From the NCBI RefSeq assembly GCF_006345805.1, contig NC_043007.1:53072001-53136000 (forward strand): DNA of 64,000 nt. Direction: 5' to 3'. The position numbers and the translations under genes are program-made. The notes under the pieces were generated by a model. It made no database searches, was not told the DNA's origin, and worked only from the letters and a program-made list of their open reading frames with translations. This DNA is from Octopus sinensis. Taxonomy: Eukaryota. Within the stretch, counting starts at the first letter, position 1. Each line of letters starts with the position of its first letter. Shown piece by piece: positions 394 to 46,600 of this stretch.

Positions 394-1144
394 TACTCTC
401 TCTTTACTGTTCAGTAGGCGTTGTCTAAGTGATATATGTGGCACTTAAAGACTGTCCAGACTATCTTTATGCCTCTGTCACATTTTTTCCATTTAATATC
501 GATCTCGCTACTGTCACCCTTTATACGAAATTTACTAGTAATTATTAATGATTGATACTAGTCAATGCTCGTAGTTGTTGCTACACACACTTACAATGCT
601 AAAGCATTGTGGGATATATACAGACAGTTCTCAAATCCACATTTTCCAAAATCTGCTTAACCAATCGTTTCCGACGCTAATCACTCCAGCTTTACTCGCG
701 GCAACATTTACAATATGCTCGTTAAGGTTTTTTTCTTTTTCTATTATAACATATTATAACCCACCCTTAGTGGTTAGCCATATTGAGATAGCTATTATAC
801 TTTACGTTGTCGAGCAGTTACTGTTTACATCTCATTCAGAGATTTATTATTGCTTGCAAACAGTTTTTCGAAATCAGTGACGGAAGTTACTAGAAAAATC
901 CATAAGTATTTGCAAACAGGTCTTCCTTTTCATCACAAACCGGTGTTTTGACTCGTCTAGGGACCCCTCTTTCATCTGCGTATTGAGAAGTTAGCTGCCT
1001 ATTTTGTTGAGTGAGTTCGTTTTTTGTTCGTCGTTGTTTATGTTTGCTCGTGAATTGAACAGTTGCCCGGGGCTGAAAATTCTGTTATTACCTTCGGGGT
1101 AATTTTTTTTTTTTATTGAAAGATTGGTTCTCATAATTTGGGAA

Positions 1145-2578
1145 ATGGAGTTCGACTTGGTGTTGAGGAGCGACTTTCCTGTGATGGGAAAAGGCGAACA
1201 GAAGGATATTGAGGTTAAAAAACAGTCTTTTTCGGCCGCAGTGGGCGGAACCGTAACGAAAGTAGAATTTAAAATAGAACAGTTGTTCGAATACCGGAAC
1301 TTGGTTAAAAAGGAAGGCAACGAAATAACACTGGGACCGCAGCAAGCGATATTACAGGAAATAAAGGCCAAGACAGTGGTGTACAAGGCTTACAGTAACA
1401 AAGAGAAAAAAATAATGGACGTGAAGAACGAAATAGTAGAGAAGTGCTTGTCCCCGGTGTGGAGCAAAATTCGCTACGTCGGTCGAGGTGCCCGCAGCGC
1501 TACCGTTGAAGCACATTTCGACTCAGCTGATGTGGCAAGAGAGATTTCATCGATGACCTTAAAAAGTGAGGACATCATGTTACTACCTACCTATATGGGA
1601 AAAAGAACTGCGAAACTATATGTGGAAGACATTCAAAGAGGATATGATATAATGTAGGTAGCAGTGGCGGTTCTGCACGACATAGAGCAGAAAGTCTCAA
1701 TTCTGCAGATGAAAAGGAAAGAGGAGGTAAACTGGAAGGGACAAGTGCTCAAACTCCTCGTTCAAGCAGAAAATAATGTGCTAGAAAACTTACCCAATAG
1801 GGTATTTATTGAGGAGGGAATTACAATGAGTGTCAGTAGAGGGGCGCAGACCTAGGTGTTTCAAATGTGGTGAAAAGGGTCACGTCCGCTCGAACTGCAT
1901 AAAAAAAAGAAAAATAGCGAAGCCCCTCCTCAAAGTGCTTCAAACACAGAAAAAGAAAAGGCGGAAAAAGACCCCAAGACTGCGACAAGGAAGGGAATCG
2001 AAACGGAAGATAAAAATGAACAAATGGAATTTACACAGGTGACACACAAAAGAAAAAAAGAAAATACCCTGGACTCCCTTCCCCAAACAAAGAAAAAATC
2101 AGCAAACACCGCAGAGATACATACAAAACAAATTCCCCAGCCCTACCCCCACGGCACTGTATTCATTGGAACACAGTTCGCCAAGCCCCTCCCCATAAAA
2201 CAAGATTGGAAAAAATTGATTAAAAAAAATGAAAAGATTGTAGCATTCGACGAGAAAAACGATAGAGTGTTCAAGTATTTTAAATTTTCAAAACTGAAAT
2301 TATTCAGTAAGTCTGCAGACACTAAGTCGACCACTCATTTTGCAAAAATAAAGGAAGACGAGTGGAAGGAAAAAACACTCCAAGAACATTTTAAAAATAA
2401 CCTTATCAGAGACGTAACTAACGAAATACTGGAGGGTAAACTTACTATAACCCCGGCAACCACACCTACCCAGAGCCCGATGGCAACGCCAGTTAAGAGC
2501 CCTGCAGCTACGACCACAAGGGAGGAAGAAGGGGAAGCATGCAGATTTAAACTGTCATGCTCCCTGTCCCAACCATAA
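1145..2578 (+). pseudogene. Tx1-like ORF1 (gag-like, zinc knuckle), broken into three frames
   Basis: ORFs 1124-1657, 1664-1855, 1830-2042 and 2024-2578; RCFKCGEKGHVRSNC is a CX2CX4HX4C knuckle; homologous to the - strand ORF1 at 32822-33833. Confidence 0.85.
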
Positions 2579-2606
2579 GTTTTTTTTTTTTTTTCTCTCT
2601 CCGACA

Positions 2607-5600
2607 ATGGCAAAGCTGGGTTGTGTGAATGTGCATGGAATGGGGTCGAAATGGAAACAAATTTGTCTCCTGAATGACCTCACGACACACGGAGTGGACG
2701 TAGCTATTGTAACCGAGTCCAAGATGAACGGGGCCCAAGCGTTCTCGCCTCTTCTAAATGGTTTTGAGAAATTTATTTCTCCTAGCCGAGGAGGAGGAAG
2801 GGGCGTGGCAGTCCTTATCAGGAAGAGCTTGGACTTGCAGGTAAGTACTGTCTTTCTGGACCCAGAAGGCAGGCTGGTCGTTCTGGATGTGACCCACGTA
2901 AGTAAACAGTCCTTCAAGTTGGTAGCTGTCTACACTCCGAATGAGTGTAGGCAGTCGGGTTTTTTTCGGAATCTGGAGCACTTTTTAGTGACATCGAAAA
3001 TGGTAGTCTTAGTAGGGGACTTTAACACTGTCCTTGAAGCGCGGGTCGACAGTGTTGGCTCAACCAATAGGAAGGGGAACCCTAGCCTCAAGGGTCTACT
3101 AGAGAGCTTTAATCTAGTAGACCGTTATCGATGAGCCAAGCGTTCCACAGTGGACGTGGAGTAATATAGACGTATATAGATAGGATATTCGTTAGGAAAA
3201 GAGATAAGGATACGTTTAGTTGTCCACAGTTTCACATTGTGCCTTACACGGATCACAAATTTGTGACTTGTAGGGTGCAATTAGATAAGTGTCATAGACA
3301 GGGACCCGGGTACTGGAAGCTGAACAAGTCTATTTTGAATTGTGAAGACTTCCGTACCCGGATTAAGGTGTTAGTACAGAGGGCATTATGTGGCACCATC
3401 ATTAACAATAGATGGTGGCAGTCCCTCAAAAGAGCCATTCGTTCAGAGTCCATTAGATTTAGCAATCAGCTAAGGTTAGATAGGTCTAGGATAGAGGACG
3501 ATTTAGTTAAGAATCTAAACGAGGCAATGGAATCTGGCTCTGCATCCGGAGTGATGGCGGCAAGGACGGTATTGTACCGTCACCTTAACTCCAAACACGA
3601 AGGTTGCAGAGTTAGAGCTAAGCTATGCGCAGGGAAACGAGAAGGTATTAACGTTGCCGGATGGGCCCGTCGAGTGGAGAGTCAGAGAGGCAACAAAGCT
3701 TCAATCAAGTCTTTAACTGACGAACAGGGACACAAGATCTATGGACAGGAGGAGATGCAAAAGTTTCTTCACCAGCATTTCGCTCGCATGTTCGGGGGTG
3801 GTGGTTCGCTGGAGCGGGGGAGGGCCTTAAAGGACTTCCTAGCCGGCGGACCGTGGCTCTCGGGGCGTGAGGTGGAGTGCTGTGAAGTAGCGATCACTCC
3901 CGCGGAGATAGAGGGGGTACTGGCTGGATGCGCCGGGGTTGGATGGTCTGCCCTACGAGTTTTATCAAAGTATGCCGGACTTGTTCGGGGGAATACTGGC
4001 AGGCGTCTACGCGAACTGGCAGCAGAACGGGAAAATTCCCAGTTCTGTAAGCCGGGGAGTGGTGACGCTAATCCAGAAAGACCCGAGCAAGGGGGATAAC
4101 ATTAGTACTTACAGGCCCATAACTCTACTTTTAGTAGAGTTAAAGATTTTGGCCAAGGTGTTGGCAAAAAGGTTGACGACTGTCGTGGAGAAACTTGTAG
4201 GGAAAGCACAGACATGTGCAATTCCAGGCAGGTCGATCCAGGACAATCTTCACCTTATACGCTACGACTTAGATAGGGTGGGTAAATTAACCGGCAAGGG
4301 CAGGGTAATGGTCCATTTAGACCAAAGTAAAGCGTTCGATAGGGTAGACCATAAGTACCTGGCGACGGTCCTCGAAGCGACTGGACTGGGCCCTGAATTT
4401 CGCAGGTGGATCTCCACTATGTATAGCGGCATCAAGTCCACCGTCCAGATAAACGGTTACCTAACGGAACCGTTTTCGATCGAATGTTCAGTTCGTCAAG
4501 GGTGCCCCTTGTCACCACTTTTGTACGTGTTGGCTCTCGAGCCATTGCTGCGAAAGTTGGAGAGGCGGGAGGACGGTTTCTGCTTATGCAGATGACGTCA
4601 CCCTCATCGTGTCCAATGAGGCTCAGCTACCTTGTGTAGAAGATGCTATCAGAGGATACGAGGCGGTGGCAGGAGCAAAAGTTAACAAGGACAAGTCGAT
4701 TGGCTTACGCCTCGGCACCTGGAGGAGCAAGTCGATATCGTCCAGTGCCGTGGGACACTGGACAGATGGTCCTGTTAAGTTGCTAGGAGTTTGGCTTGGG
4801 CCAGACTCCCAAACGGAGAGGAATTGGAGTGAGGTGACGGGCAAGGTGGAGGCCATAGTACGGAAGGTTTCTGTCCTTGAAAGGAAGGGCGGGGTGGTAC
4901 AGATGTTTATTGCATCTGTAATCACTTACCGCCCGACCGTTGTCCCTTGCCCCGATTCATGGCTTAGCAAGTTGGAGCGAATCCTTTTCCGCTTTTTGTG
5001 GAAGGGAGGAAAGCCACTTGTGAGGCGCTCTGTTTGCTGCCAGGAACCGTTAAAGGGTGGGTTAGGAATGCCTTGGTTGATGATGCGCAGACATGCGTTG
5101 AGGCTGAAGCATCTCTGGCACCACCTGGAGGGTGATAAGGTGTGGAGTCCGCTGGCAGGGGAATTTTTCCCGAGACCGGCTTCCTTAGTGAATTTTAAAC
5201 CCGGTTGCATCAAAAGATGGAATCTGACTCTATGGCAAAAGGAGTGCCGACAGGCACTCACGCTGATCCACAAGGCGGGCAAGGCCGGCTGCGGAAATAC
5301 CACCTTGGTATTTTATAGCAGGCTGGTAGAGGCAAAGAACGACGACGTCCTAGGAGGGGCTCTGGGGTTTGACGAGGACCAGCTTACCAACCTGTTTAAA
5401 AAGACTTTCAGGACGGGGTATTTGGATAATTTCCAAAGATCCCTGGCCTGGCAGTGTTATAGGAATGCTTTACCTGTTCGCGAGAAGTTATCGCGGCACA
5501 GAATTTCAGTGCCACCGACATGTCCAAGATGCGGGTTGGACGATGAAACCGTCCAGCACGCTTTTGTACACTGTCGGCAGTTATCAGACTTGATAAGTTA

Positions 5601-5913
5601 CGTGTTATCGCATCTGGGACGAGTACAGCTGTCGGCTGAGTCTATGATTAAGATGATACCGCCAACTGGACTCTCGAAGGAAGGTGAGGCATGTTTTCAC
5701 TGCACGGTTGCAGTAGTAAAAGAATGCATGTGGCATACAAGAATGGAAGGAGTCGCAATAAGATCCTTTGTCTCAGGCCCCAGCTTGCTCACTTACTTCA
5801 GATATCATCTAAAGAGCAAAATGGGGCTGGAAAAGAAGACCTTACCACGAGGTGTGTATGAAAAAAGATGGAAGGAAGTGGCGAAAAAGGTGGGTGTCAG
5901 AAACCCAGTTTAA
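2607..5913 (+). pseudogene. Tx1-like ORF2: AP endonuclease, reverse transcriptase and zf-RVT, frameshifted
   Basis: LGCVNVHG..., VGDFN, YTDH (APE); YRPITLL, KAFDRVDH, RQGCPLSPLLY, YADD at ~4586-4597 (RT); CPRCGLDDETVQHAFVHC (zinc finger). Confidence 0.9.
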
Positions 5914-6165
5914 CTATGGATGGAGAAGAGGAAAGGAAAGCTGCGGGGCCTTATAGGTTGCTGGGGTTTAAAATATATTGGTAAGATTTCAATCGTAATG
6001 TTATATTAGTCAATGCAAAGGACAGTTTATATACAGTTTTTTTGTATAATGAATAATCCATATATTTTGGAAATTTTTAAACGAACCACTTAACTGTTTT
6101 TGTATGTATGTCCTGTATTGTTCTTCTATGTACTGATTTTATAATCATAATAAAGAATTAATCGT

Positions 6166-6697
6166 AAACTGGTGTTTTGACTCGTCTAGGGACCCCTCTT
6201 TCACCTGCGTATTGAGAAGTTAGCTGCCTATTTTGTTGAGTGAGTTCGTTTTTTGTTCATCGTTGTTTGTGTTTGCTCGTGAATTGAACAGTTGTCCGTT
6301 GTGTGACAGTAATTTTCGCCCTACGGGAATGAAAATTCTGTGTATAAACATTGTTATTACCTTCGGGGTAATTTTTTTTTTTTTTTTTTTGAAAAATTGG
6401 TTCTCATAATTTGAGAAATGGAGTTCAACTTGGCGTCAAGGAGCGACTTTCCCGTGATGGGAAAAGGCGAACAGAAGGATATCGAGGTTAGAAAACAGTC
6501 TTTCGGCCGCAATGGGCGGAACCGTAACGAAAGTAGAATTTAAAATAGAACAGTTGTTCGAATACCGGAACTTGGTTAAAAAGGAAGGCAACAAAATAAA
6601 ACTGGTACCGCCGCAAGCGATATTACAGGAAATAAAGGCCAAGACAGTGGTGTACAAGGTTTACAGTGGGCGGAACCGTAACGGAAGTGGAATTCAA
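6166..6697 (+). mobile_element. Second tandem Tx1-like copy: 5' UTR and start of ORF1 only (3'-truncated)
   Basis: Aligns with 937-1390 (about 90% by eye, with a ~45-bp insertion near 6296-6345); GGTVTKVEFKIEQLFEYRNLVKKEGN is repeated. Confidence 0.9.
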
Positions 6698-7115
6698 TCG
6701 GTGAAAATTTTCAAATAATTTTTGGGTAAAATTTTCTGTGAAAAATTTTGAAAAACCAAATAATGAATATGCTCCATATGCTGAAGTCTATAAACGTCGA
6801 CATCGTCATACTTGTTAAGTGTAAAGCAGAACCTGGTGTATCGTCGATGGTGAGGCATCTTGACAGTAGTAGTAAGCCAGAATTCACTCTATATATACAG
6901 AGAAAGCAGCCGCAGCAGCCACATGAAAGTCTATTTTTAGCAATAACATAAATCTAAGGTCATTTTTGGGTAAAATTTTCAGTGAACATTTTCGAAAAAT
7001 TTTGGGGGAAAATTTTTGAAAAACCATATAATATGCTCCATATGTCAATAAACGTTGACATCATTTTCAATGAAAATTTTCGAAAAATTTTTGGATAAAA
7101 TTTTCAGTGAAAATG

Positions 7116-7235
7116 CCAAAATCTCAAAGTATGGAAGGCCAGCGGTGCCAAAATCACAAAGTATGGAAGGCCAGTGGTGCCAAAATCACAAAGTGTGGAA
7201 GGCCAGCAGTGCCAAAATCACAAAGTATGGAAAGC
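7116..7235. repeat. 32-bp minisatellite GCCAAAATCACAAAGTATGGAAGGCCAGCGGT (clusters also at 8046-8167, 8526-8706, 9020-9110)
   Basis: Three to six tandem copies per cluster, read directly from the sequence. Confidence 0.9.
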
Positions 7236-7474
7236 CATTTTTGGATAAAATTTTCAGTGAAAATTTTCGGAAAATTTTTGGTGAAAATTTTCGACAAATT
7301 ATTGGGTAAAATTCTCGGTGAAAATTTTCGAAAAATTTTGGGGAAAATTTTTGGTGAAAATTTTCGAAAAACCATATAACGAATATGCTCCATATGCTGA
7401 AGTCTATAAAGGTCGACATCGTCATAGTTGTTAAAAGTAAAGCAGAATCTGGTGTATCGTGGATGGTGAGGCAT
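7154..7474 (-). CDS. Chimeric ORF: Rep-like N-terminus reading into satellite (106 aa); expression unknown
   Basis: ORF track; the first 36 aa are Rep-like (FTFNNY variant) and the remainder is satellite-derived FPKIF repeats. Confidence 0.25.
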   Translation of the reverse strand: MPHHPRYTRFCFTFNNYDDVDLYRLQHMEHIRYMVFRKFSPKIFPKIFRKFSPRILPNNLSKIFTKNFPKIFTENFIQKWLSILCDFGTAGLPHFVILAPLAFHTL

Positions 7475-7744
7475 CTTGACAGTAGTAGTAAACCAGAATT
7501 CACTTTATATATACACAGAAAGCAGCCACATAAAATCTATTTTTAGCAATAACATAAATCTATTTTTGGGTAAAATTTTCGGTGAACATTTTCGAAAAAT
7601 ATTTGGGGAAAATTTTTTCGTGAAAATTTTCGAAAAATTTTTGGCGTAAAACTTTCAGTGAAAATTTTAGAAAAATTTTTGGGGAAAATTTTCGGCAAAA
7701 GTTTTCAAATAATTTTTGGGGAAAATTTTCGGTTAAAATTTTAG

Positions 7745-7852
7745 AAAAACCATATAACGAATATGCTCCATATGCTGAAGTCTATAAACGTCTACATCGT
7801 CATAGTTGTTAAGTGTAAAGCAGAACCTGGTGTATCGTGGATGGTGAGGCAT
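7745..7852 (-). pseudogene. CRESS-DNA-virus-like HUH Rep N-terminal fragment (representative copy)
   Basis: Translates MPHHPRYTRFCFTLNNYDDVDVYRLQHMEHIRYMVF: RCR motif I (FTLNN) followed ~15 aa later by Y-M-V-F, as in circovirus-like Reps. Motifs II and III are absent. Confidence 0.7.
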
Positions 7853-9559
7853 CTTGACAGTAGTAGTAAGCCAGAATTCATTCTATATATACACAGAAAG
7901 CAGCAGGCACATAAAAATTTATTTTTAACAATAACATAAATCTATTTTTGGGTAAAATTTTCAGTGAACATTTTCGAAAAATGTTTGGGGAAAATATTCG
8001 GTGAAAATTTTTGAAAAATTTTTGGGTAAAATTTTCGGTGAAAATGCCAAAATCACAAAGTATGGAAGGCCAGCGGTGCCAAAATCACAAAGTATGGAAA
8101 GCCAGCGGTGTCAAAATCACAAAGTATGGAAGGCCAGTGGTGCCAAAATCACAAAGTATGGAAGGCCATTTTTGGGTAAAATTTTCAGTGAAAATTTTTG
8201 GAAAATTTTTGGTGAAAATTTTCGAGAAATTATTGGGTAAAATTTTCGAAAAACCATATAAGGAAGTCTTATATGCTCCATATGCTGAAGTCTATAAACG
8301 TCTACATCGTCATAGTTGTTAAGTGTAAAGCAGAATCAGGTTTATCGTGGATGGTGAGGCATCTTGACAGTAGTAGTAAACCAGAATTCACTCTATATAT
8401 ACACAGAAAGCAGCCACATGAAAATCTATTTTTAGCAATAACATAAATCTATTTTTGGGTAAAATTTTCGGTGAACATTTTCGAAAAATATTCAAAAAAT
8501 TTTTGGTAAAATTTTCGGTGAAAATGCCAAAATCACAAAGTATGGAAGGCCAGCAATGCCAAAATCACAAAGTATGGAAGGCCAGCGGTGCTAATATCAC
8601 AAAGTATGGAAGGCAAGTGGTTCCAAAATCACAAAATGGAAGGCTAGCGGTGCCAAAATCACAAAGTGGAAGGCCAGCGGTGCCAAAATCACAAAGTATG
8701 GAAAGCAATTTTTGGGTAAAATTTTCAGTGAAAATTTTCGACAAATTATTGGGTAAAATTTCCGAAAAATTTTTGGATAAAATTTTCGGCTAAAATTTTA
8801 GAAAAAACCTTATGACGAATATGCTGAAGTCTACAAATGTCGACATCGTCATAGATGTTAAGTGTAAAGCAGAACCTAGTGTATCGTGGATGGTGAGGGA
8901 TCTTGACAGTAGTAGTAAACCAGAATTCATTCTATATATACACAGAAAGCAGCAGGCACATAAAAATCTATTTTTAGCAATAACATAAATCTATATTTGG
9001 GTAAAATTTTCGGTGAAAATGCCAAAATCACAAAGTATGGAAGGCCAGCGGTGCCAAAATCACAATGTATGGAAGGCCAGCGGTGCCAAAATCACAAAGT
9101 ATGGAAAGCCATTTTTGGGTAAAATTTTCAGTGAAAATTTTCGGAAAATTTTCGACTAATTATTAATAATTTTCGGTGAAAATTATCGAAAAACCATATA
9201 ACGAATATGCTCCATATGCTGAAGTCTATAAACGTCGACATCGTCATAGTTGTTAAGAGTAAAGCGGAACCTGGTGTATCGTGGATGTTGAGGCATCTTC
9301 ACAGTGGTAGTAAGCCAGAATTCACTCTATATATACACAGAAAGCAGCAGGCACATAAAAATCTATTTATAGCAATAACATAAATCTATTTTTGGGTAAA
9401 ATTTTTGGGAAAAATTTTCGAAAAAATTTTGGTTAAAATTTTCGGTGAAAACTTTCAAAAAACCATATAACGAATACGCTCCATATGCTGAAGTCTATAA
9501 ACGTTGACATCGTTTTCGGTGAAAATTTTCGAAAAATTTTTGGTGAAAATTTGAAAATA

Positions 9560-11720
9560 TTTCAAAATATTTGTGAAAATTTCAAAATATTGCAAATAAG
9601 CATAAAAAAGTGAACAAAACAAAATGTATCAAAATATAGCAAATAAAATGTATCTTGAATGTATCTTGATACATTTTATTTGCTATATTAAGCAAGTATA
9701 GGAAAAAAGTGAAGAAAATTGCCCATTCCAAAATATTTTGACACATTTTGCATCTCTAGTGGATGAATGTAATCTTGTCAAAATTTTGCAAGAACAAAAT
9801 TGCTATTTCATACTTCTTGTTTTTTAGTACCTATTTGCAATATTTTGACACATTTTGTATCCTAAAATACTTTGAGACTTTATATTTACTCAAGAGATCA
9901 CTCAAGTCACAAAAGTTTTTAGAAAACAAAATGTATCAAAATATAGCAAATAACATGTATCAGAACATAGCAAATATAGCAAAAAAAGTGAACAAAATTG
10001 CCAATGCCAATTTGTTGATTTTTAGTACTAATTTGCAATATTTTAACACATTTCGTATCTTTAAAACTTTTGAGACTCTTGTGACATCTTGGATGAATGT
10101 ACTCTTATTATCAATCTGTTAACTTATATTTACTCAAGGGAGCACTCAAGTCACATACGTTTTGAGAAAACAAAATATATTGCAAATAAGCATAAAAAAG
10201 TGAAAATTGCTGTTTCATACTTCTTGTTTTTTAGTACTTATTTGCAATATTTTGACACACTTTGTATTTTTTAAACTTTTTAAACTTTAGTTTTGAAACT
10301 TGGATAAATGTAATCTTATTATCAATCTGTTAACATATTTACTCAAGAGATCACTCAAGTCAGAAAAGTTTTCAAAAAACAAAATGTATCAAAATATAGC
10401 AAATAAGCATGAAAAAGTGAACAAAATTGTTAATTCAAATTTGTTGCAATATTTTGACACATTTACATCTTAAAAATTTTTGTATACTGTTTTAATATAT
10501 TGCAAATAAGCATAAAAAAGTGAACAAAATTGCCATTTCATACTTCTTATTTTCTAGTACCTATTTGCAATATTTTGACACATGTTGTATACTGAAATCT
10601 TTTAAGACATAAGTGATCTCTTGGATGAATGTAATCTTATTATCAATCTGTTAACTTCTATTTACTCAAGAGATCACTCAAGTCAAAAAAGTTTTCAAAA
10701 AACAAAATGTATCAAAATATAGCAAATTAGCATAAAAAAGTAAACAAAATTGTTAATTAAAATTTGTTGCAATATTTTGACACATTTTGCATCTTAAAAA
10801 CTTTTGAGAGTTTAGTGATCTCTTACTCAAGTCACAAAAGTTGTGAGAAAACAAAATGTGTCAAAAAGCATAAAGAAGTAAACAAAATTACTATTTCATA
10901 CTTCTTGTTTTTTAGTACTTATTTGCAATATTTAGACATTTTGTATTTTGAAAACTTTTGAAACTCTAGCGATCTCTTGGATAAATGTAATCTTATTATC
11001 AATCTGTTAACTTATATTTACTCAAGCAATCACTCAAGTCACATACGTTTTGAGAAAACAAAATGTTTTAATATATTGCAAATAAGCATAAAAATGTAAA
11101 CAAAATCGCTATTTCATACTTGTTTTTTAGTACCTATTTGCAATATTTTGACACATTTTGTATACTGAAATCTTTTAAGACTTTAGTGATCTCTTAGATT
11201 ATTGTCAGAAAAGTTTTCAAAAAGCGAATAACCATTAAAAAGTGAACAAAATTGTTAATTTATATTTCTTGTTATTTAGTACTTATTTGCAATATTTTGA
11301 CACATTTCATATCTTGAAAACATTTGAGACTCTAGTGAATGTAATCTTGTCAAAATTTTGCCAATAAACATAAAAAAGTAAACAAAATTTGCTATTTCTT
11401 GTTTTTTAGTACTTATTTTTCAAGATACAAGCGATCACTAAAGTTAACTCAAGGGATCACTCAAGTCATAAGTTTTGAGAAAACAAAATATTTTAATATA
11501 TTGCAAATAAGCATAAAAAAGTGAACAAAATTGCTATTTCATACTTCTTGTTTTCTAGTACCTATTTGCAATATTTTGACACGTTGTGTACTGAAATCTT
11601 TTAAGACATAAGTGATCTCTTATATGAATGTAATCTTATTATCAATCTGTTAACTCAAGAGATCACTCAAGTCAGAAAAGTTTTCAAAAATCAAAATGTA
11701 TCAAAATATAGCAAATAAGT
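9560..11720. repeat. AT-rich ~220-240-bp satellite built from alternating inverted arms
   Basis: For example TATTGCAAATA 10498-10508 / TATTTGCAATA 10562-10572 and AGTGATCTCTTG 10612-10623 / CAAGAGATCACT 10667-10678, recurring through the array. Confidence 0.85.
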
Positions 11721-11724
11721 TTGA

Positions 11725-13425
11725 TTTGAATGTGTTGTCTATTTCGTTTGATTTGAGCGTTAATGCCGGGCCAGTATATACATTCCTTGGCTCGCTCTGT
11801 GCATTTTTCAATACCCATGTGTCCGGTATGTATTTCCTGTAGAGCTTCTCTACGTAATGACTTAGGTACAATGATTCTTGGACCTTTTAGAACGAGACCA
11901 TTGACGATCGATATTTCATCACGAACAGAGACGAATGGTTTGATGTTTATTGGTATTTTGTCTTTTGGGGGCCATTCTGTTCTTGTATATGTGATGAGAG
12001 TCTGTAGTGACGGGTCGTCTGCAGTGGCTTTTTTGTACTCGTTTAATTTAGTGTCGGTTATGGGGTAATTTTTTATTACTGCATGTATGTGCGATTTCAT
12101 ATCTTCGTCTGATGCTTCTGGAGTATTTTGTTCAAGGTATGCACGTGATAGGGTATCTGCAACAACTGATTCTTTACCAGGTATGTGGTTTAGGTCAAAA
12201 TCGTATCTTTGTAATGCTAGTAGAAATCTTTGGATTCTTCATTTAGTGATCGATTTTATGAATATTTGCTTCAACGGTTTATGGTCATTTTCGATTCTGA
12301 AATGAGTTCCGTATATAAACTGATGAAATTTCTTGCATGCAAAAACTATACTGAGAGCTTCGCTCTCTATCGGACAGTAGTTTTGTTCCGCTTGAGTTGT
12401 TGCACAAGATGCAAACGAAACAGGTAGCCATCTTTCTTTGTGTTTCTGCTCAATTATCGCTCTGAGCCCATGCTCACTAGCATCTGTAGTTATTTTTATT
12501 GGTAGATCTGGATCATAAAATTGTAGCACTGGTTTTCTGGTAATCATTTCTTTTAGCTTTTTTATTGCTTCGATTTGGGGTTTGTTGAATGACCATAACG
12601 TGTCACTCTGTAGAAGCTGGCGTAATGGTGCTGTAACATCGGAGTAATTTGATAAAAATTTACATAGGTAATTTGTCATACCTAGGAATCTTTGTAATTC
12701 TTTTTTACTTGTTGGCAGTGGCATGTGAATGATTGCTTGCACTTTGGTTGGATCTTGTTTTATCCCTTCGCTGGTTAATAGATGCCCAAGGTACGTAATT
12801 TGTGATTCATAGAAGATACGCTTTGATTTATTTAACTTTAATCCGTGCTTTCGGATTCGTTCGAAAACTTGTTGTAGTCTATTTCTGTGTTCTTCTAAAG
12901 TGCTGGACCAGATTATAATGTCATCCTGTGAATTTCGTGCTCCTTCTATACCCTCTATTATTTTTGCGATTTCTTTTTGGAAAACTTCACTGGCGCTGTG
13001 AATTCCATAGGGTAGTCGTGTGAAGCGATATCTTCCAAAAGGTGTGTTGAACGTTAACAGGTGAGAGCTTTCTTCGTCAACTGGAATTTGCCAGTATCCA
13101 TTAGATGCATCGAGTTTCGAAAAATATTGCATATGACGAGCTATTTGAGTTTTGGTGCCTTTTCTGTCGTGTTGACTATATACCCTTGAGATTTCGTTAT
13201 CTCTTGTTTCGGATGTGGTGTTCAGCATCCTTGATTGGTGTGGTGTTTGCTCTGCACTCTGACCTGCTTGAATTGTTTTTTGTAAGTCTAAATTTGGTTC
13301 TCTCAATAATATTTCTCTTAGTCTCATGTCTCTGATTCCACATATCAGAATATCTCTGGTGAGACTGTCTGTGAGGTTGCCGAATTTGCACTGTTGTGCC
13401 TTTTGGCGCAACTCTACCATGTACT
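11725..13425 (-). mobile_element. Gypsy element A, downstream part (gag end, RT, RNase H, integrase zinc finger); truncated at the satellite
   Basis: FSKLDASNGYWQ, LPYGIHSASEVFQ, SQDDIII, TTDASEHGL, ENDHKPL; EIHTGHMGIEKC...IYWPGI. No 3' LTR found. Confidence 0.9.
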
Positions 13426-19390: not shown

Positions 19391-20215
19391 TTGTTACTGA
19401 TGCTTTTAGCCCCAGGCGATCAACGTCACCAGATGGACTTTAGACACAAACTATCAGTGCGCTTGTGTTATTTGCAAAGGGAGGTCATCCTCCCTCGAAA
19501 ACCTAAGTGCTACATACGGACTATAGTTTCAAGGTAATTGCCTCTCGTCAACGCATAGTAAACATCGGTTTTCGATGAAGGAGACCCCTTGCAAATAATA
19601 ATATTTAACGTTTTTCACAGCAACCACTGTCACTGATTTAGAAAAACTGTCTGAAAGCATTAATAAATCTCTGAACGAGATATAAACAGTAACCGCTCGA
19701 CAACGTAAGGTGTACTAGCCATCTGAATGTGGCTAGCCACTGGGGTTGGGGTGTTACTGATGCTTTTAGCCCCAGGCGATCAACGTCACCAGATGGACTT
19801 TAGACACAAACTATCAGTGCCCTTGTGTTATTTGCAAAGGGAGGTCATCCTCCCTCAAAAACCTAAGTGCTATATACGGACTATAGTTTCAAGGTAATTG
19901 CCTCTCGTCAACACATGGTAAACACCGGTTTTCGATGAAGGATACCCCTTGCAAATAATAATATTTAACGTTTTTCACAGCAACCAATGTCACTGATTTA
20001 GAAAAACTGTCTGAAAGCATTAATAAATCTCTGAACGAGATATAAACAGTAACCGCTCGACAACGTAAGGTGTACTAGCCATCTGAATGTGGCTATGGGG
20101 CTAAAAGCATTAGTAACACCCCACCCCCAGTGGCTAGCCACATTCAGATGGCTAGTACACCTTACGTTGTTGAGCGGTTACTGTTTATATCTCGTTCAGA
20201 GATTTATTAATGCTT
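19391..20215. repeat. Unclassified ~360-bp dispersed repeat ('repeat X'): two tandem copies plus an inverted partial copy
   Basis: 19391-19752 and 19753-20090 are near-identical; 20095-20215 is the reverse complement of ~19656-19782. Homologs occur at ~860-950 (-) and at 34730-34821 plus 36779-36975. Confidence 0.85.
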
Positions 20216-29321: not shown

Positions 29322-29690
29322 GCACAGGAGTGGCTTTGTGGTAAGTAGCTTGCTTACCAACCACATGGTTCCGCGTTCAGTCCCACTGCGTGGCACCTTG
29401 GGCAAGTGTCTTCTACTATAGCCTCGGGCCGACCAAAGCCTTGTGAGTGGATTTGGTAGACGGAAACTGGAAGAAGCCTGTCGTATATATGTATGTATAT
29501 GCGTGTATATGTTTGTGTGTCTGTGTTTGTCCCCCCACCATTGCTTGACAACCGATGCTGGTGTGTTTATGTCCCCGTAACTTAGCGGTTCAGCAAACGG
29601 ACTGATAGAATAAGTCCTGGGGGCGATTTACTCGACTAAAAGGTGGTGCTCCAGCATGGCCACAGTCAAATGACTGAAACAAGTAAAAGA
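29322..29690 (+). mobile_element. Octopus-type SINE
   Basis: GGAGTGGCT.TGTGGTAAGTAGCTTGCTTACCAACCACATGGTTCC.GGTTCAGTCCCACTGCG...CAAATGACTGAAACAAGTAAAAGA; matches 45525-45910. Confidence 0.85.
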
Positions 29691-29888
29691 GTATACATCA
29701 TTTATTTTGTATATATTTTCCATTGGCATTCTTTCGATATAACTCGGCAAAATCAAAACATTTCACTTCAGGTATTTCCGTGGGAGCAAATGACAGTTCG
29801 ATTCTGTTTTTTGCTTGAAAATTTGCGGATTTTACATACACACATGAAACAGGTAAGAACAAATATGCAAGGTTTTTTTTTCTTCAAG

Positions 29889-34821: not shown

Positions 34822-36778
34822 GGTTAATATAGGGCGTTACGTATATCAGAAAATCAAAAAAAAATGTGTGTAATAGGTGTAAAACAACTTCCTATGAACG
34901 AATATGAAAAAAAAATTCGCGCACGCGAAAGGGGGGTGGGGGAGAGGCCTCGGAAAATTCACATCGGGAAGTTCCGAAAGCGTCTGAGGGGCTGACCCGG
35001 GCACCAAAACAAAAAAAAAATAGTGTAATATGTGTAAAACAACTTGCTCTAAACGAAAATGACAAAAAAAATTCGCACTCGCGAAAGAGGGGTGGGGGAG
35101 AGGCTTCGGAAAATTTATATCGGGAATTTCTGAAAGCGTCTGAACCGGGCACAAAAACAAAAACAAAAACAGCGTAATAGGTGTAAAACAACTTGCTCTA
35201 AACGACTATCATGAAAAAAATGCGCGCTCGCGAAAGGGGGGGTGGGGGAGAGGCTTCGGAAATTTCCCATCTTCAGTCCACGGCCTTTAAACTAAGAAAA
35301 AATAGTGTAATTGGTGTAAAACTACTTGTTCTAAACGAGGATCAAGAACACACACTCACACATGAATCATAAACTCCGTATTTTTGTACATATTTCGCAA
35401 AAAAAAAAAAAAATAATAAAGAGAAGAAATTCTGGAAAAAGTGAAGAAATGTTGGATCTCATTCCTTGGTTAAAGCTATTTTAAACATTAAATTTATGCT
35501 TTTCTTTGAAATAGTTCAGATATATGCAATTCTTCTCACTTATTAAGATGCATTTATCAGAAAAAAAGAGACAGAAAAAATAATTATTTTGTGTCAATCC
35601 TTCCCTAATTATCCTTTATTAATTAGTTTTGGCGTGTATTTTTTTCCCAAATTTATTTTTTCACCTTTACAACACTGTTTAGTAAAGCAATTAATTATCT
35701 TTATAATTTGCATATTTGACTTATTAATCAAAATTCTCTAGATGTAATATATACTAAGTAATGCATCCTTCATTTATGTGTTCCGTTCTGTATTATGCAT
35801 GCGTGACTGTTTGTATGTAAGTGTGTTTAACTGTGCACATGAATGTGAATATTAAAGAACATATTTATTTACTATGATTGTTATTTTCAGAACAAATAAA
35901 TCTTTTGGCTGTTGTGTTATTGATGTTATTATTATTGCTAGTTAAAGGGTGGTGACTTGGCTGAATATTTTGAGTCTTGTAGTATGTAGTTGTGTTAGTC
36001 AATATTCTGAGTTCAAATCCAACTCATTTCTTTATCATCATTGTCGATGGACCACTCAAAGAGGTATGTATACATTATCATTTTCGTAACATATGTTCTG
36101 TAGTATTTCAAGATGTTTCTGACACGTATTTTGATTCACATAGCGGAGATCCAACATTTCTTCACTTTTTCCAGAATTTCTTCTCTTTATTATTTTTTTT
36201 TTTGCGAAATATGTACAAAAATACGGAGTTTATGATTCATGTGTGAGTGTGTGTTCTTGATCCTCGTTTAGAACAAGTAGTTTTACACCAATTACACTAT
36301 TTTTTCTTAGTTTAAAGGCCGTGGACTGAAGATGGGAAATTTCCGAAGCCTCTCCCCCACCCCCTTTCGCGAGCGCGCATTTTTTTCATGATAGTCGTTT
36401 AGAGCAAGTTGTTTTACACCTATTACGCTGTTTTTGTTTTTGTTTTTGTGCCCGGTTCAGACGCTTTCGGAAATTCCCGATATAAATTTTCCGAAGCCTC
36501 TCCCCCACCCCTCTTTCGCGAGTGCGAATGTTTTTGGTCATATTCGTTTAGAGCAAGTTGTTTTACACATATTACACTATTTTTTTTTTGTTTTGGTGCC
36601 CGGGTCAGCCCCTCGGACGCTTTCGGAACTTCCCGATGTGAATTTTCCGAGGCCTCTCCCCCACCCCCTTTCGCGTGCGCGAATTTTTTTTTTCATATTC
36701 GTTCATAGGAAGTTGTTTTACACCTATTACACACATTTCTTTTTGATTTTCTGATATACGTAACGCCCTATATTAACC
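34822..36778. mobile_element. Non-autonomous foldback DNA element: ~640-bp TIRs with ~120-bp internal tandem units, 8-bp TSD
   Basis: GGTTAATATAGGGCG...CGCCCTATATTAACC; TSD GATTTAAG (34814-34821) / GATTTAGG (36779-36786); spacer ~35461-36144 with no ORF. Confidence 0.88.
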
Positions 36779-45266: not shown

Positions 45267-45426
45267 GTGTGGGAGTGGCTATATGGTAAGTAGCTTGCTT
45301 ACCAACCACATGGTTCCAGGTTCAGGCCCACTGCGTGGCACTTTGGGCGGGTGTCTTCTACTATAGCGCCAGGCAGACCAAAGCCTTGTGAGTGGATTTG
45401 GTAGACAGAAACTAAAAGAAGCCTGT

Positions 45427-45516
<90 letters not shown>

Positions 45517-45910
45517 ATATATATAGAGTGGCTGTGTGGTAAGTAGCTTGCTAACCAACCACATGGTTGCGGGTTCAGTCCCACTGCGTGGCATCTTGGG
45601 CAAGTGTCTTCTGCTATAGCCCCGGGCCGACCAATGCCTTGTGAGTGGATTTGGTAGACGGAAACTGTCGTATATATGTATATATATATATATATATGTG
45701 TGTCTGTGTTTGTCCCCCTAGCATTGCTTGACAACCGATGCTGGTGTGTCTACGTCCCCGCCACTTAGCGGTTCGGCAAAAGAGACCGATAGAATAAGTA
45801 CTGGGCTTACAAAGAATAAGTTCCAGGGTCGATTTGATCGACTAAAGGCGGTGCTCCAGCATGGCCGCAGTCAAATGACTGAAACAAGTAAAAGAGTAAA
45901 AGAGTAAAGA
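45265..45910 (+). mobile_element. Two tandem octopus-type SINEs (partial 45265-45427, full 45525-45910)
   Basis: Same sequence as 29322-29690. Confidence 0.85.
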
Positions 45911-46412: not shown

Positions 46413-46444
<32 letters not shown>

Positions 46445-46468
<24 letters not shown>

Positions 46469-46600
46469 TGTGTGTCTTTGTTTGTTTCCCCACCATCGTT
46501 GGACAACTCATGTTAGTTGGACAACTTAGCGGTTCAGCAAAAGAGACCGATAGAATAAGTACTAGGCTTACAAAGAATAAGTCCTGAGCTCGATTTGCAA
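46445..46600 (+). mobile_element. SINE 3' fragment
   Basis: TTAGCGGTTC.GCAAAAGAGACCGATAGAATAAGTACT matches 45765-45820. Confidence 0.75.

What the first reader, a model, noticed from the sequence alone, without database searches (positions are those of the whole stretch)
6698..9560. Satellite built around a captured CRESS-DNA-virus-like Rep promoter and N-terminus
Seen: a ~195-bp block is repeated 6 times (ATG positions on - strand 6858, 7474, 7852, 8362, 8901 mutated to ATC, 9296) plus 2 partial copies. It encodes MPHHPRYTRFCFTLNNYDDVDVYRLQHMEHIRYMVF and breaks off into low-complexity DNA at the same point. Known: (R/W)xFTLNN is RCR motif I of circovirus-like HUH Reps and is typically followed ~15 aa later by Y-hydrophobic-V-F/G before motif II. 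Inference: an ssDNA-virus (or Replitron-like) fragment was endogenised and then amplified as part of a higher-order satellite with irregular periods (616, 378, 510, 539, 395 bp). I do not know of a described cephalopod satellite of this type. It could be a small-RNA source against related viruses, or a rolling-circle amplification product.
Basis: partly seen in the sequence, partly recalled or inferred. Interest (0 to 1): 0.85.

Follow-up and report, generated by a model that had tools for sequence, protein, structure and literature searches.

The report
Viral Rep gene stub repeated in tandem
A 190-bp relic of a circovirus-like virus, holding the first 36 codons of its replication gene plus about 80-110 bases upstream, was trapped in a probable octopod genome and copied six times within a local tandem repeat; it looks like a decaying viral fossil, not a working gene.

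Summary
Six copies of a ~190-bp block, 92-96% identical, and two partial copies lie on the minus strand of 6698-9596. They alternate with a 12-13-bp AT-rich microsatellite and a 32-bp minisatellite.

The encoded 36-residue peptide is a genuine N-terminus of a CRESS-DNA (circovirus-like) Rep.
- It matches Pfam Viral_Rep positions 2-28 only weakly.
- A search of 1.84 billion proteins finds two real relatives (80% and 64% identity). They sit on contigs with a cap-like ORF, an intergenic hairpin and a rep remnant that passes the Pfam threshold and matches solved circovirus Rep nuclease domains.
- In 32 of 83 environmental CRESS loci the peptide aligns in frame to the stretch just before the motif II region.
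- Differences from the relatives fall mostly on third codon positions.

The window copies themselves drift neutrally, and two of six are broken. The fragment lacks motifs II and III and the helicase, so it cannot act as Rep. No origin hairpin is present, and upstream ("promoter") homology to the viral intergenic region is not significant.

Best reading: an endogenous viral fragment amplified in situ by unequal exchange. The closest known analogue is the tobacco geminivirus-related DNA arrays. This is a new member of a known kind. Interest is moderate.

The parts
6698..9596 (-). Whole composite tandem array: Rep-stub blocks alternating with AT-rich microsatellite and 32-bp minisatellite
6747..6942 (-). 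Block copy 1: upstream part plus 36-codon Rep N-terminal stub (ORF part 6751-6858), frame open
7015..7062 (-). Partial copy (3' end of the block only)
7363..7548 (-). Block copy 2 (ORF part 7367-7474), frame open and running on into the microsatellite as a 106-aa ORF
7741..7930 (-). Block copy 3 (ORF part 7745-7852), frame open; best Pfam Viral_Rep score of the copies (E 0.009, profile positions 2-28 of 82)
8245..8437 (-). Block copy 4, broken: two stops in the stub frame and one in-frame indel
8819..8979 (-). Block copy 5, broken: no start codon and one in-frame indel
9188..9374 (-). Block copy 6 (ORF part 9189-9296), frame open
9458..9513 (-). Partial copy (3' end of the block only), with the same 5' breakpoint as 7015-7062
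7114..7237 (.). 32-bp minisatellite, 3.9 units
8045..8168 (.). 32-bp minisatellite, 3.9 units
8525..8703 (.). 32-bp minisatellite, 5.7 units
9020..9111 (.). 32-bp minisatellite, 2.9 units
7562..7749 (.). Longest run of the AT-rich 12-13/37-bp microsatellite. Similar runs flank every block, e.g. 7237-7371, 7947-8045, 8168-8253, 8707-8807, 9388-9456 and 9513-9596
6158..6697 (+). Left neighbour: 5' fragment of a second LINE copy (86% identical to 929-1396). It ends in a 34-bp duplication (6510-6543 repeated at 6664-6697) at the junction with the array
9597..11733 (.). Right neighbour: unrelated AT-rich satellite (sub-repeats about 200 bp, TRF period 356), followed by a Gypsy element truncated in its integrase

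Best explanation
The block is a dead fragment of an endogenous circovirus-like (CRESS-DNA) virus. It holds about 80-110 nt of sequence upstream of rep plus the first 36 codons of rep, cut off just before the motif II region. After integration in the germline of a probable octopod, the fragment came to lie among an AT-rich 12-13-bp microsatellite and a 32-bp minisatellite. The composite unit (378-616 bp) was then multiplied on the spot by unequal exchange or replication slippage, including duplications that span several units. The copies now drift neutrally. They encode no working Rep and most likely have no protein function. Shown: the Rep origin of the stub, the single origin of all copies, the tandem amplification and the neutral drift. 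Inferred: the order of events, the amplification mechanism and the viral origin of the upstream part.
For: Rep identity: Pfam Viral_Rep matches profile positions 2-28/30 in three of four copies tested (E 0.009-0.04). HMMER against 1.84e9 proteins returns two real relatives, P0002 (80% identity, E 3.5e-11) and P0003 (64%, E 1e-8). Their contigs carry a divergent Arg-rich cap-like ORF, an intergenic hairpin with loop GGTAATACTA and rep remnants scoring 47.4 and 38.7 bits on Viral_Rep against a cut-off of 26. These remnants match solved Rep nuclease domains 2hw0, 5xor, 6wdz and 7lar. The window peptide hits 32 of 83 environmental CRESS loci at E<0.01. Those hits end in frame exactly where the motif II-III piece begins to match, inside intact Reps of 279-320 aa. 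Coding frame: differences from the relatives by codon position are 6/3/14 and 12/3/17. Single origin and in-situ amplification: all copies share both ends, and both partial copies share one breakpoint. Multi-unit self-matches occur at shifts of 1487 and 2441 bp. Decay: variable columns among copies are 12 of 78 upstream and 5/4/8 of 36 per codon position in the ORF, and two of six copies are broken. Host setting: the array lies between a LINE 5' fragment and a second satellite that abuts a truncated Gypsy element.
Against: The window peptide alone stays below Pfam's gathering score (16.7 against 26 bits) and has no direct match among solved structures. The identification therefore rests on bridging relatives from a single sequencing project (the SRR118693xx runs) whose organism I could not name. 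The viral origin of the upstream part is not demonstrated. Four of six copies still keep an open frame behind a TATA box, so expression is not excluded. Copy number elsewhere in the genome is unknown, so the unit could belong to a dispersed repeat family. No exact ORF products of the array were on record in the public assemblies searched.
Confidence: 0.78

Rival explanations
1. The array is the integrated multimer of a defective, subgenomic viral circle (an intergenic fragment plus the rep 5' end plus captured host DNA) that was first amplified by rolling-circle replication. Only later did microsatellite length changes blur it.
For: CRESS viruses replicate by rolling circle. Hybrid virus/host minicircles and tandem endogenous arrays of rep plus intergenic region are documented in plants (PMC6293997 as listed; PMC5014472). 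The upstream edge of the block lies about 85-110 nt from the ATG. That is roughly the distance at which the relatives carry their hairpin loop (81-97 nt).
Against: No hairpin and no loop of the relatives' type occurs in any unit. The units differ by whole blocks of non-viral mini- and microsatellite. The duplicated partial copies and the multi-unit self-matches are what in-situ unequal exchange produces. The left junction shows a 34-bp host duplication rather than a viral end.
Confidence: 0.1
2. The unit is the internal tandem-repeat region of a non-autonomous transposable element, or a dispersed satellite family, that picked up the Rep stub. This window shows just one of many copies.
For: The window is packed with mobile elements. 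The array is bounded on both sides by truncated elements. From established knowledge, mollusc satellites are often carried inside mobile elements.
Against: No second copy of the block, the 32-bp unit or the microsatellite lies elsewhere in the 64 kb. No terminal repeats or target duplications bracket the array. No related ORF products were found in the public protein collections beyond the two rep relatives.
Confidence: 0.15
3. The array is functional. Six TATA-bearing units drive transcripts that feed a small-RNA (piRNA-type) response against related viruses, or they produce a short Rep N-terminal peptide.
For: TATA boxes lie 39 nt before each ATG and are kept in all six copies. Four frames are open. 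The setting is dense in transposable elements and resembles a small-RNA cluster. Endogenous geminiviral tandem repeats in yam do yield siRNAs (PMC5014472).
Against: Nothing here measures expression. Substitutions among copies show no codon bias. Two copies are broken. A 36-residue stub lacks motifs II and III and the helicase, so it cannot nick or unwind DNA.
Confidence: 0.08

Closest known systems
Geminivirus-related DNA (GRD) arrays of Nicotiana
   Same: Each unit holds a degenerate, truncated rep gene plus a fragment of the viral intergenic region. The units are clustered as multiple direct repeats and evolve neutrally (PMC5014472).
   Different: The host is a plant and the donor a begomovirus. 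GRD units keep an origin-like hairpin, and none was found here. Here only 36 codons survive, and the units are padded with non-viral micro- and minisatellites.
EGV1 tandem arrays of yam (Dioscorea)
   Same: An endogenous ssDNA-virus sequence present as tandem repeats containing partial rep genes (PMC5014472).
   Different: The unit is 2.6 kb, nearly genome length, with a hairpin and with reading frames that are partly intact and transcribed. Here the viral part is a 190-bp stub.
Circovirus-like endogenous elements (CVe) of animal genomes
   Same: Rep-derived fossils of circovirus-like or CRESS viruses in invertebrates, including bivalve and gastropod molluscs (PMC6069186).
   Different: That survey lists no cephalopod: 'octopus' and 'cephalopod' each occur 0 times in its text, and 'tandem' also occurs 0 times. 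Here the fossil is amplified in tandem.
Rep relatives P0002, P0003 and P0005 on Logan contigs L003-L009 (runs SRR11869385, 390, 391, 394)
   Same: Same Rep N-terminus (64-80% amino-acid identity, about 80% DNA identity over 103 nt). L003 and L007-L009 end in the SINE-like host repeat that also occurs four times in this window.
   Different: They retain a cap-like ORF, a hairpin-bearing intergenic region and the rest of the rep endonuclease. L004 also keeps helicase remnants. The rep of L004 is split into at least three separate open pieces. They are not arranged in tandem on the contigs seen.
Environmental CRESS-DNA viruses (e.g. IMG/VR contig L001; metagenome contigs L019, L052)
   Same: Intact Reps of 279-320 aa whose first 40-50 residues align with the window stub at 43-53% identity.
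   Different: They are free small genomes or metagenome contigs with complete rep. The closest endonuclease-domain identity to the cephalopod-type relatives is only 49%, so the donor lineage itself is unsampled.

Membership tests
CRESS-DNA virus Rep (Pfam Viral_Rep PF02407, HUH endonuclease) | N-terminal motif I region aligned to the start of the family profile | tested here: met
   Profile positions 2-28/30 are matched in three of four copies tested, below the cut-off. The match is confirmed through relatives and 32 environmental Reps.
CRESS-DNA virus Rep (Pfam Viral_Rep PF02407, HUH endonuclease) | Motif II (metal-binding HUH-type) and motif III (catalytic Tyr) | tested here: not met
   The block ends before profile position 30. 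tblastn with the relatives' motif II-III piece finds only its first 18 residues in the window, and these are an out-of-frame overlap with the stub. The window holds a fragment derived from the family, not a member protein.
CRESS-DNA virus Rep (Pfam Viral_Rep PF02407, HUH endonuclease) | C-terminal superfamily 3 helicase | tested here: not met
   No tblastn match to the helicase piece of L004 or to the full Rep of L001 beyond the stub.
Endogenous viral element | Virus-derived sequence embedded in host chromosomal DNA | tested here: met
   The array lies between a LINE 5' fragment and a second satellite that abuts a truncated Gypsy element, in a 64-kb window full of host repeats.
Endogenous viral element | Donor is a virus with a capsid gene rather than a transposon or plasmid | tested here: inconclusive
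   The relatives have a divergent Arg-rich ORF next to rep. Its only Pfam hit is Circo_capsid at E 1.4, and it has no match among solved structures or environmental loci.
GRD-type tandem endogenous ssDNA-virus array | Truncated rep in multiple direct repeats | tested here: met
GRD-type tandem endogenous ssDNA-virus array | Intergenic fragment carrying an origin-like hairpin in each unit | tested here: not met
   No inverted repeat of that kind occurs in the block, and no TAATACTA-type loop occurs in the array. Upstream similarity to the relatives' intergenic region is not significant.
Satellite DNA in the strict sense | Long arrays and high genomic abundance | not testable with these tools
   Only this 2.9-kb array is visible. 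No host genome can be searched with the tools on hand.
Replitron or Helitron (HUH transposons) | Full-length transposase with element termini and no capsid gene | tested here: not met
   Only a 36-codon stub is present. The relatives show a cap-like ORF, an intergenic region and rep laid out as in small ssDNA viruses.

The most novel reading that the evidence does not exclude
The six TATA-bearing Rep stubs form a transcribed array kept as a small-RNA source against circovirus-like viruses of cephalopods. That would be an animal counterpart of the siRNA-yielding endogenous geminiviral repeats of plants, built from a viral promoter region that now drives satellite transcription.
Probability: 0.1. 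Interest if true: 0.65.

Novelty: new member of a known kind. Interest (0 to 1): 0.4.

Why it matters
It adds a genomic fossil of a circovirus-like virus to a probable cephalopod host. The surveys I could read do not list this group, so it extends the known past host range of these viruses. It also shows in an animal what has been described for tobacco and yam: a truncated rep fragment can seed or ride a tandem array. On the practical side, the short ORFs in 6698-9596 should not be annotated as genes. The donor virus lineage is unsampled, since the closest environmental Reps are at most 49% identical in the endonuclease domain.

Tried and rejected
1. Direct match of the 39-aa peptide to solved structures: none.
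2. Word-index protein searches with the 106-aa ORF and with P0003: nothing beyond self.
3. Exact-product look-ups of seven window ORFs, three of them unrelated transposon ORFs tried to name the organism: none on record.
4. Two strong-looking hits, P0001 (2848 aa, 40 stretches) and P0004, were rejected. P0004 is a repeat of a translated sequencing-adapter artefact. P0001 shows the same many-stretch pattern.
5. Rfam: no family in the window.
6. A degenerate back-translation of the window's own motif I stretch in IMG/VR: 0 matches.
7. Upstream-region homology by local and ATG-anchored global alignment against shuffles: not significant.
8. An exon-intron boundary at the 3' break: no convincing donor site follows the last shared codon, and the relatives continue the coding sequence there.
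10. More stub copies, or cap or helicase pieces, elsewhere in the window: none.
Full report
**1. Observation**

A blastn of one block against the whole window gives the same picture.
- Six copies of a ~190-bp block lie at 6747-6942, 7363-7548, 7741-7930, 8245-8437, 8819-8979 and 9188-9374.
- Their start-to-start spacings are 616, 378, 510, 539 and 395 bp.
- Two partial copies, 7015-7062 and 9458-9513, hold only the 3' end of the block.
- No further copy lies anywhere else in the 64 kb.
- Copies are 91.9-95.7% identical to each other.
- All copies end at the same base and run into an AT-rich 12-13/24/37-bp repeat.
- Four intervals also contain a 32-bp minisatellite of 2.9-5.7 units. Its varying unit number explains the irregular periods.

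**2. Is the peptide really a Rep N-terminus?**

On its own the evidence is weak. Pfam Viral_Rep scores E 0.009-0.04 (14.6-16.7 bits, cut-off 26) in three of the four copies tested. The match always covers profile positions 2-28/30, at the start of the peptide. Solved structures gave nothing.

An exhaustive HMMER search of 1.84 billion representative proteins returned four hits.
- Two are artefacts. P0004 is a concatenated, translated sequencing adapter. P0001 has the same 40-stretch look.
- Two are real. P0002 has 78 aa and is 80% identical over residues 1-36 (E 3.5e-11). P0003 has 104 aa and is 64% identical (E 1e-8).

The real relatives sit on short Logan contigs from four runs of one project: SRR11869385, 390, 391 and 394. 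On L007 the following features are seen.
- A minus-strand ORF with an arginine-rich N-terminus diverges from rep.
- The two are separated by an intergenic region of about 166 bp that holds a short imperfect hairpin with loop GGTAATACTA.
- The rep piece reaches the Pfam Viral_Rep gathering score (38.7 bits, profile positions 2-82).

L004 has the same layout.
- Its rep remnant reads as at least three separate open pieces.
- One piece scores 47.4 bits on Viral_Rep positions 29-82.
- Another piece matches the helicase part of 21 environmental loci.
- Its rep piece, and P0003 (from L003), match solved Rep nuclease domains 2hw0, 5xor, 6wdz, 8h56 and 7lar.

**3. Independent confirmation from environmental viruses**

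An alignment of the relatives' endonuclease pieces retrieved 80 metagenome contigs, 30-49% identical and mostly 1-3 kb. A tblastn of the window's 36-residue peptide against these plus three IMG/VR loci gave E<0.01 in 32 of 83 loci and E<1e-3 in 18. In locus after locus the hit ends at the very base before the motif II-III match begins, and it is in frame. Examples are L052 (2890-3000 then 3001-3270), L019 (286-375 then 376-555) and L013 (448-558 then 559-738). In L019 and L052 these positions lie inside intact Reps of 279 and 320 aa. The stub is therefore the Rep N-terminus up to just before the motif II region.

**4. Is this frame the coding frame?**

Yes. Differences between the window stub and L004 fall 6/3/14 on codon positions 1/2/3. 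Against L007 they fall 12/3/17. That is the mark of purifying selection on this frame while the lineages diverged.

DNA similarity to L004 is about 80%. It begins at the ATG and stops at the end of the block.

Among the six window copies the pattern is flat. Variable columns number 12 of 78 upstream, and 5/4/8 of 36 per codon position in the ORF.

Two copies are broken.
- One has two stops in the stub frame and one in-frame indel.
- The other has no start codon and one in-frame indel.

The gene was under selection in its viral life and has drifted since amplification.

**5. The "promoter"**

Each block carries a TATA box starting 39 nt before the ATG. The relatives have one at 43 and 41 nt. 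All three share a CTGCTGCT motif 7-13 nt upstream of the TATA box.

The alignment scores do not support homology.
- Local and ATG-anchored global alignments of the upstream 100-110 nt against the relatives' intergenic regions give z from -0.6 to 2.9.
- The two relatives compared with each other give z 6.2-10.9.
- No hairpin and no loop of the relatives' type is present in the block.

The upstream part is co-amplified with the stub. It may be viral, but that is not shown.

**6. Setting and host**

The array's left neighbour (6158-6697, plus strand) is the 5' end of a second LINE copy. It lies head-to-tail behind a full LINE at 929-6157 that has the endonuclease, reverse-transcriptase and zf-RVT domains. 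At the junction with the array, 34 bp of the LINE are duplicated (6510-6543 and 6664-6697).

The right neighbour is an unrelated AT-rich satellite reaching about 11733. It abuts a Gypsy element truncated in its integrase.

The best named relatives of the LINE ORF2 are from Argonauta hians (48%) and Octopus sinensis (44%). This fits a cephalopod, probably octopod, host.

A SINE-like repeat occurs four times in the window. It also forms the first 34-40 nt of contigs L003 and L007-L009. Those relatives are therefore embedded in a host genome with the same repeat family, which makes them endogenous elements of a related animal.

**7. How the array arose**

All copies share both block ends, so one truncated fragment was the ancestor. 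Self-comparison shows long off-diagonal matches spanning several units.
- 6698-8018 matches 8185-9462 (shift 1487).
- 6703-7103 matches 9144-9552 (shift 2441). This match includes a full block, the microsatellite and the partial copy.

This is the footprint of repeated unequal exchange or slippage in place. Mini- and microsatellite length changes were laid over it.

A rolling-circle multimer is not excluded. It is disfavoured by the missing origin structure and by the non-viral padding of each unit.

**8. Function**

A 36-residue stub without motifs II and III and without the helicase cannot act as Rep. Nothing here measures transcription. Four open frames behind TATA boxes leave a small chance of expression, or of a small-RNA role like the one reported for endogenous geminiviral repeats in yam (PMC5014472). 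I rate that at about 0.1.

**9. Comparison and novelty**

Circovirus-like fossils are known from bivalves and gastropods (PMC6069186). That paper mentions no cephalopod and no tandem arrangement. My literature searches found no cephalopod case.

This is a new member of a known kind: an endogenous CRESS-virus fragment, tandemly amplified.

Noticed in passing
window 929-6697: Two LINE copies lie head to tail. A full-length one at 929-6157 has an ORF1 with a zinc knuckle plus endonuclease, RT and zf-RVT domains. Only the first ~510 bp of a second copy follow at 6158-6667 (86% identical). The second copy ends in a 34-bp internal duplication (6510-6543 = 6664-6697) exactly where the Rep-stub array starts, which suggests a template-switch type rearrangement.
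   Followed up: partly
window 9597-11733: A second, unrelated AT-rich satellite (sub-repeats about 200 bp, TRF period 356, 78% matches) directly abuts the Rep-stub array. It runs up to a Gypsy integrase ORF (11684-12100, minus strand) that it appears to truncate.
   Followed up: partly
window 29402-29693, 45351-45455, 45600-45898, 46443-46597: A SINE-like interspersed repeat is present four times (78-82% identical). Its first ~40 nt also end the Logan contigs L003 and L007-L009 that carry the related endogenous rep, which ties those contigs to a related host genome.
   Followed up: partly
window 34850-35271 and 36331-36750: Two arrays of a ~150-156-bp tandem repeat (2.7-2.8 units each) lie in opposite orientation about 1 kb apart, like subterminal repeats of a DNA transposon.
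   Followed up: no
P0001 and P0004: Public protein collections contain 'proteins' made of translated sequencing-adapter repeats. They matched the short Rep peptide at E 6.8e-32 through many weak repeats. This is a trap for short-peptide searches.
   Followed up: yes
L052 and L035 (metagenome contigs of about 22 kb): The environmental Reps closest to the full 36-residue stub (43% identity from residue 1) sit on contigs of about 22 kb, far larger than a typical CRESS genome. In L052 a 476-aa ORF follows rep on the same strand.
   Followed up: no
window 7921-7960 and equivalents in each block: Within the upstream part of each block, two direct repeats of about 10-12 nt flank a T/A-rich 11-13-nt segment some 65-105 nt before the ATG. 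This is roughly where the relatives carry their hairpin loop. Whether it is a decayed origin is unresolved.
   Followed up: partly
window 19392-20095: A 360-bp unit is present twice in tandem at 97% identity, which indicates a recent duplication.
   Followed up: no
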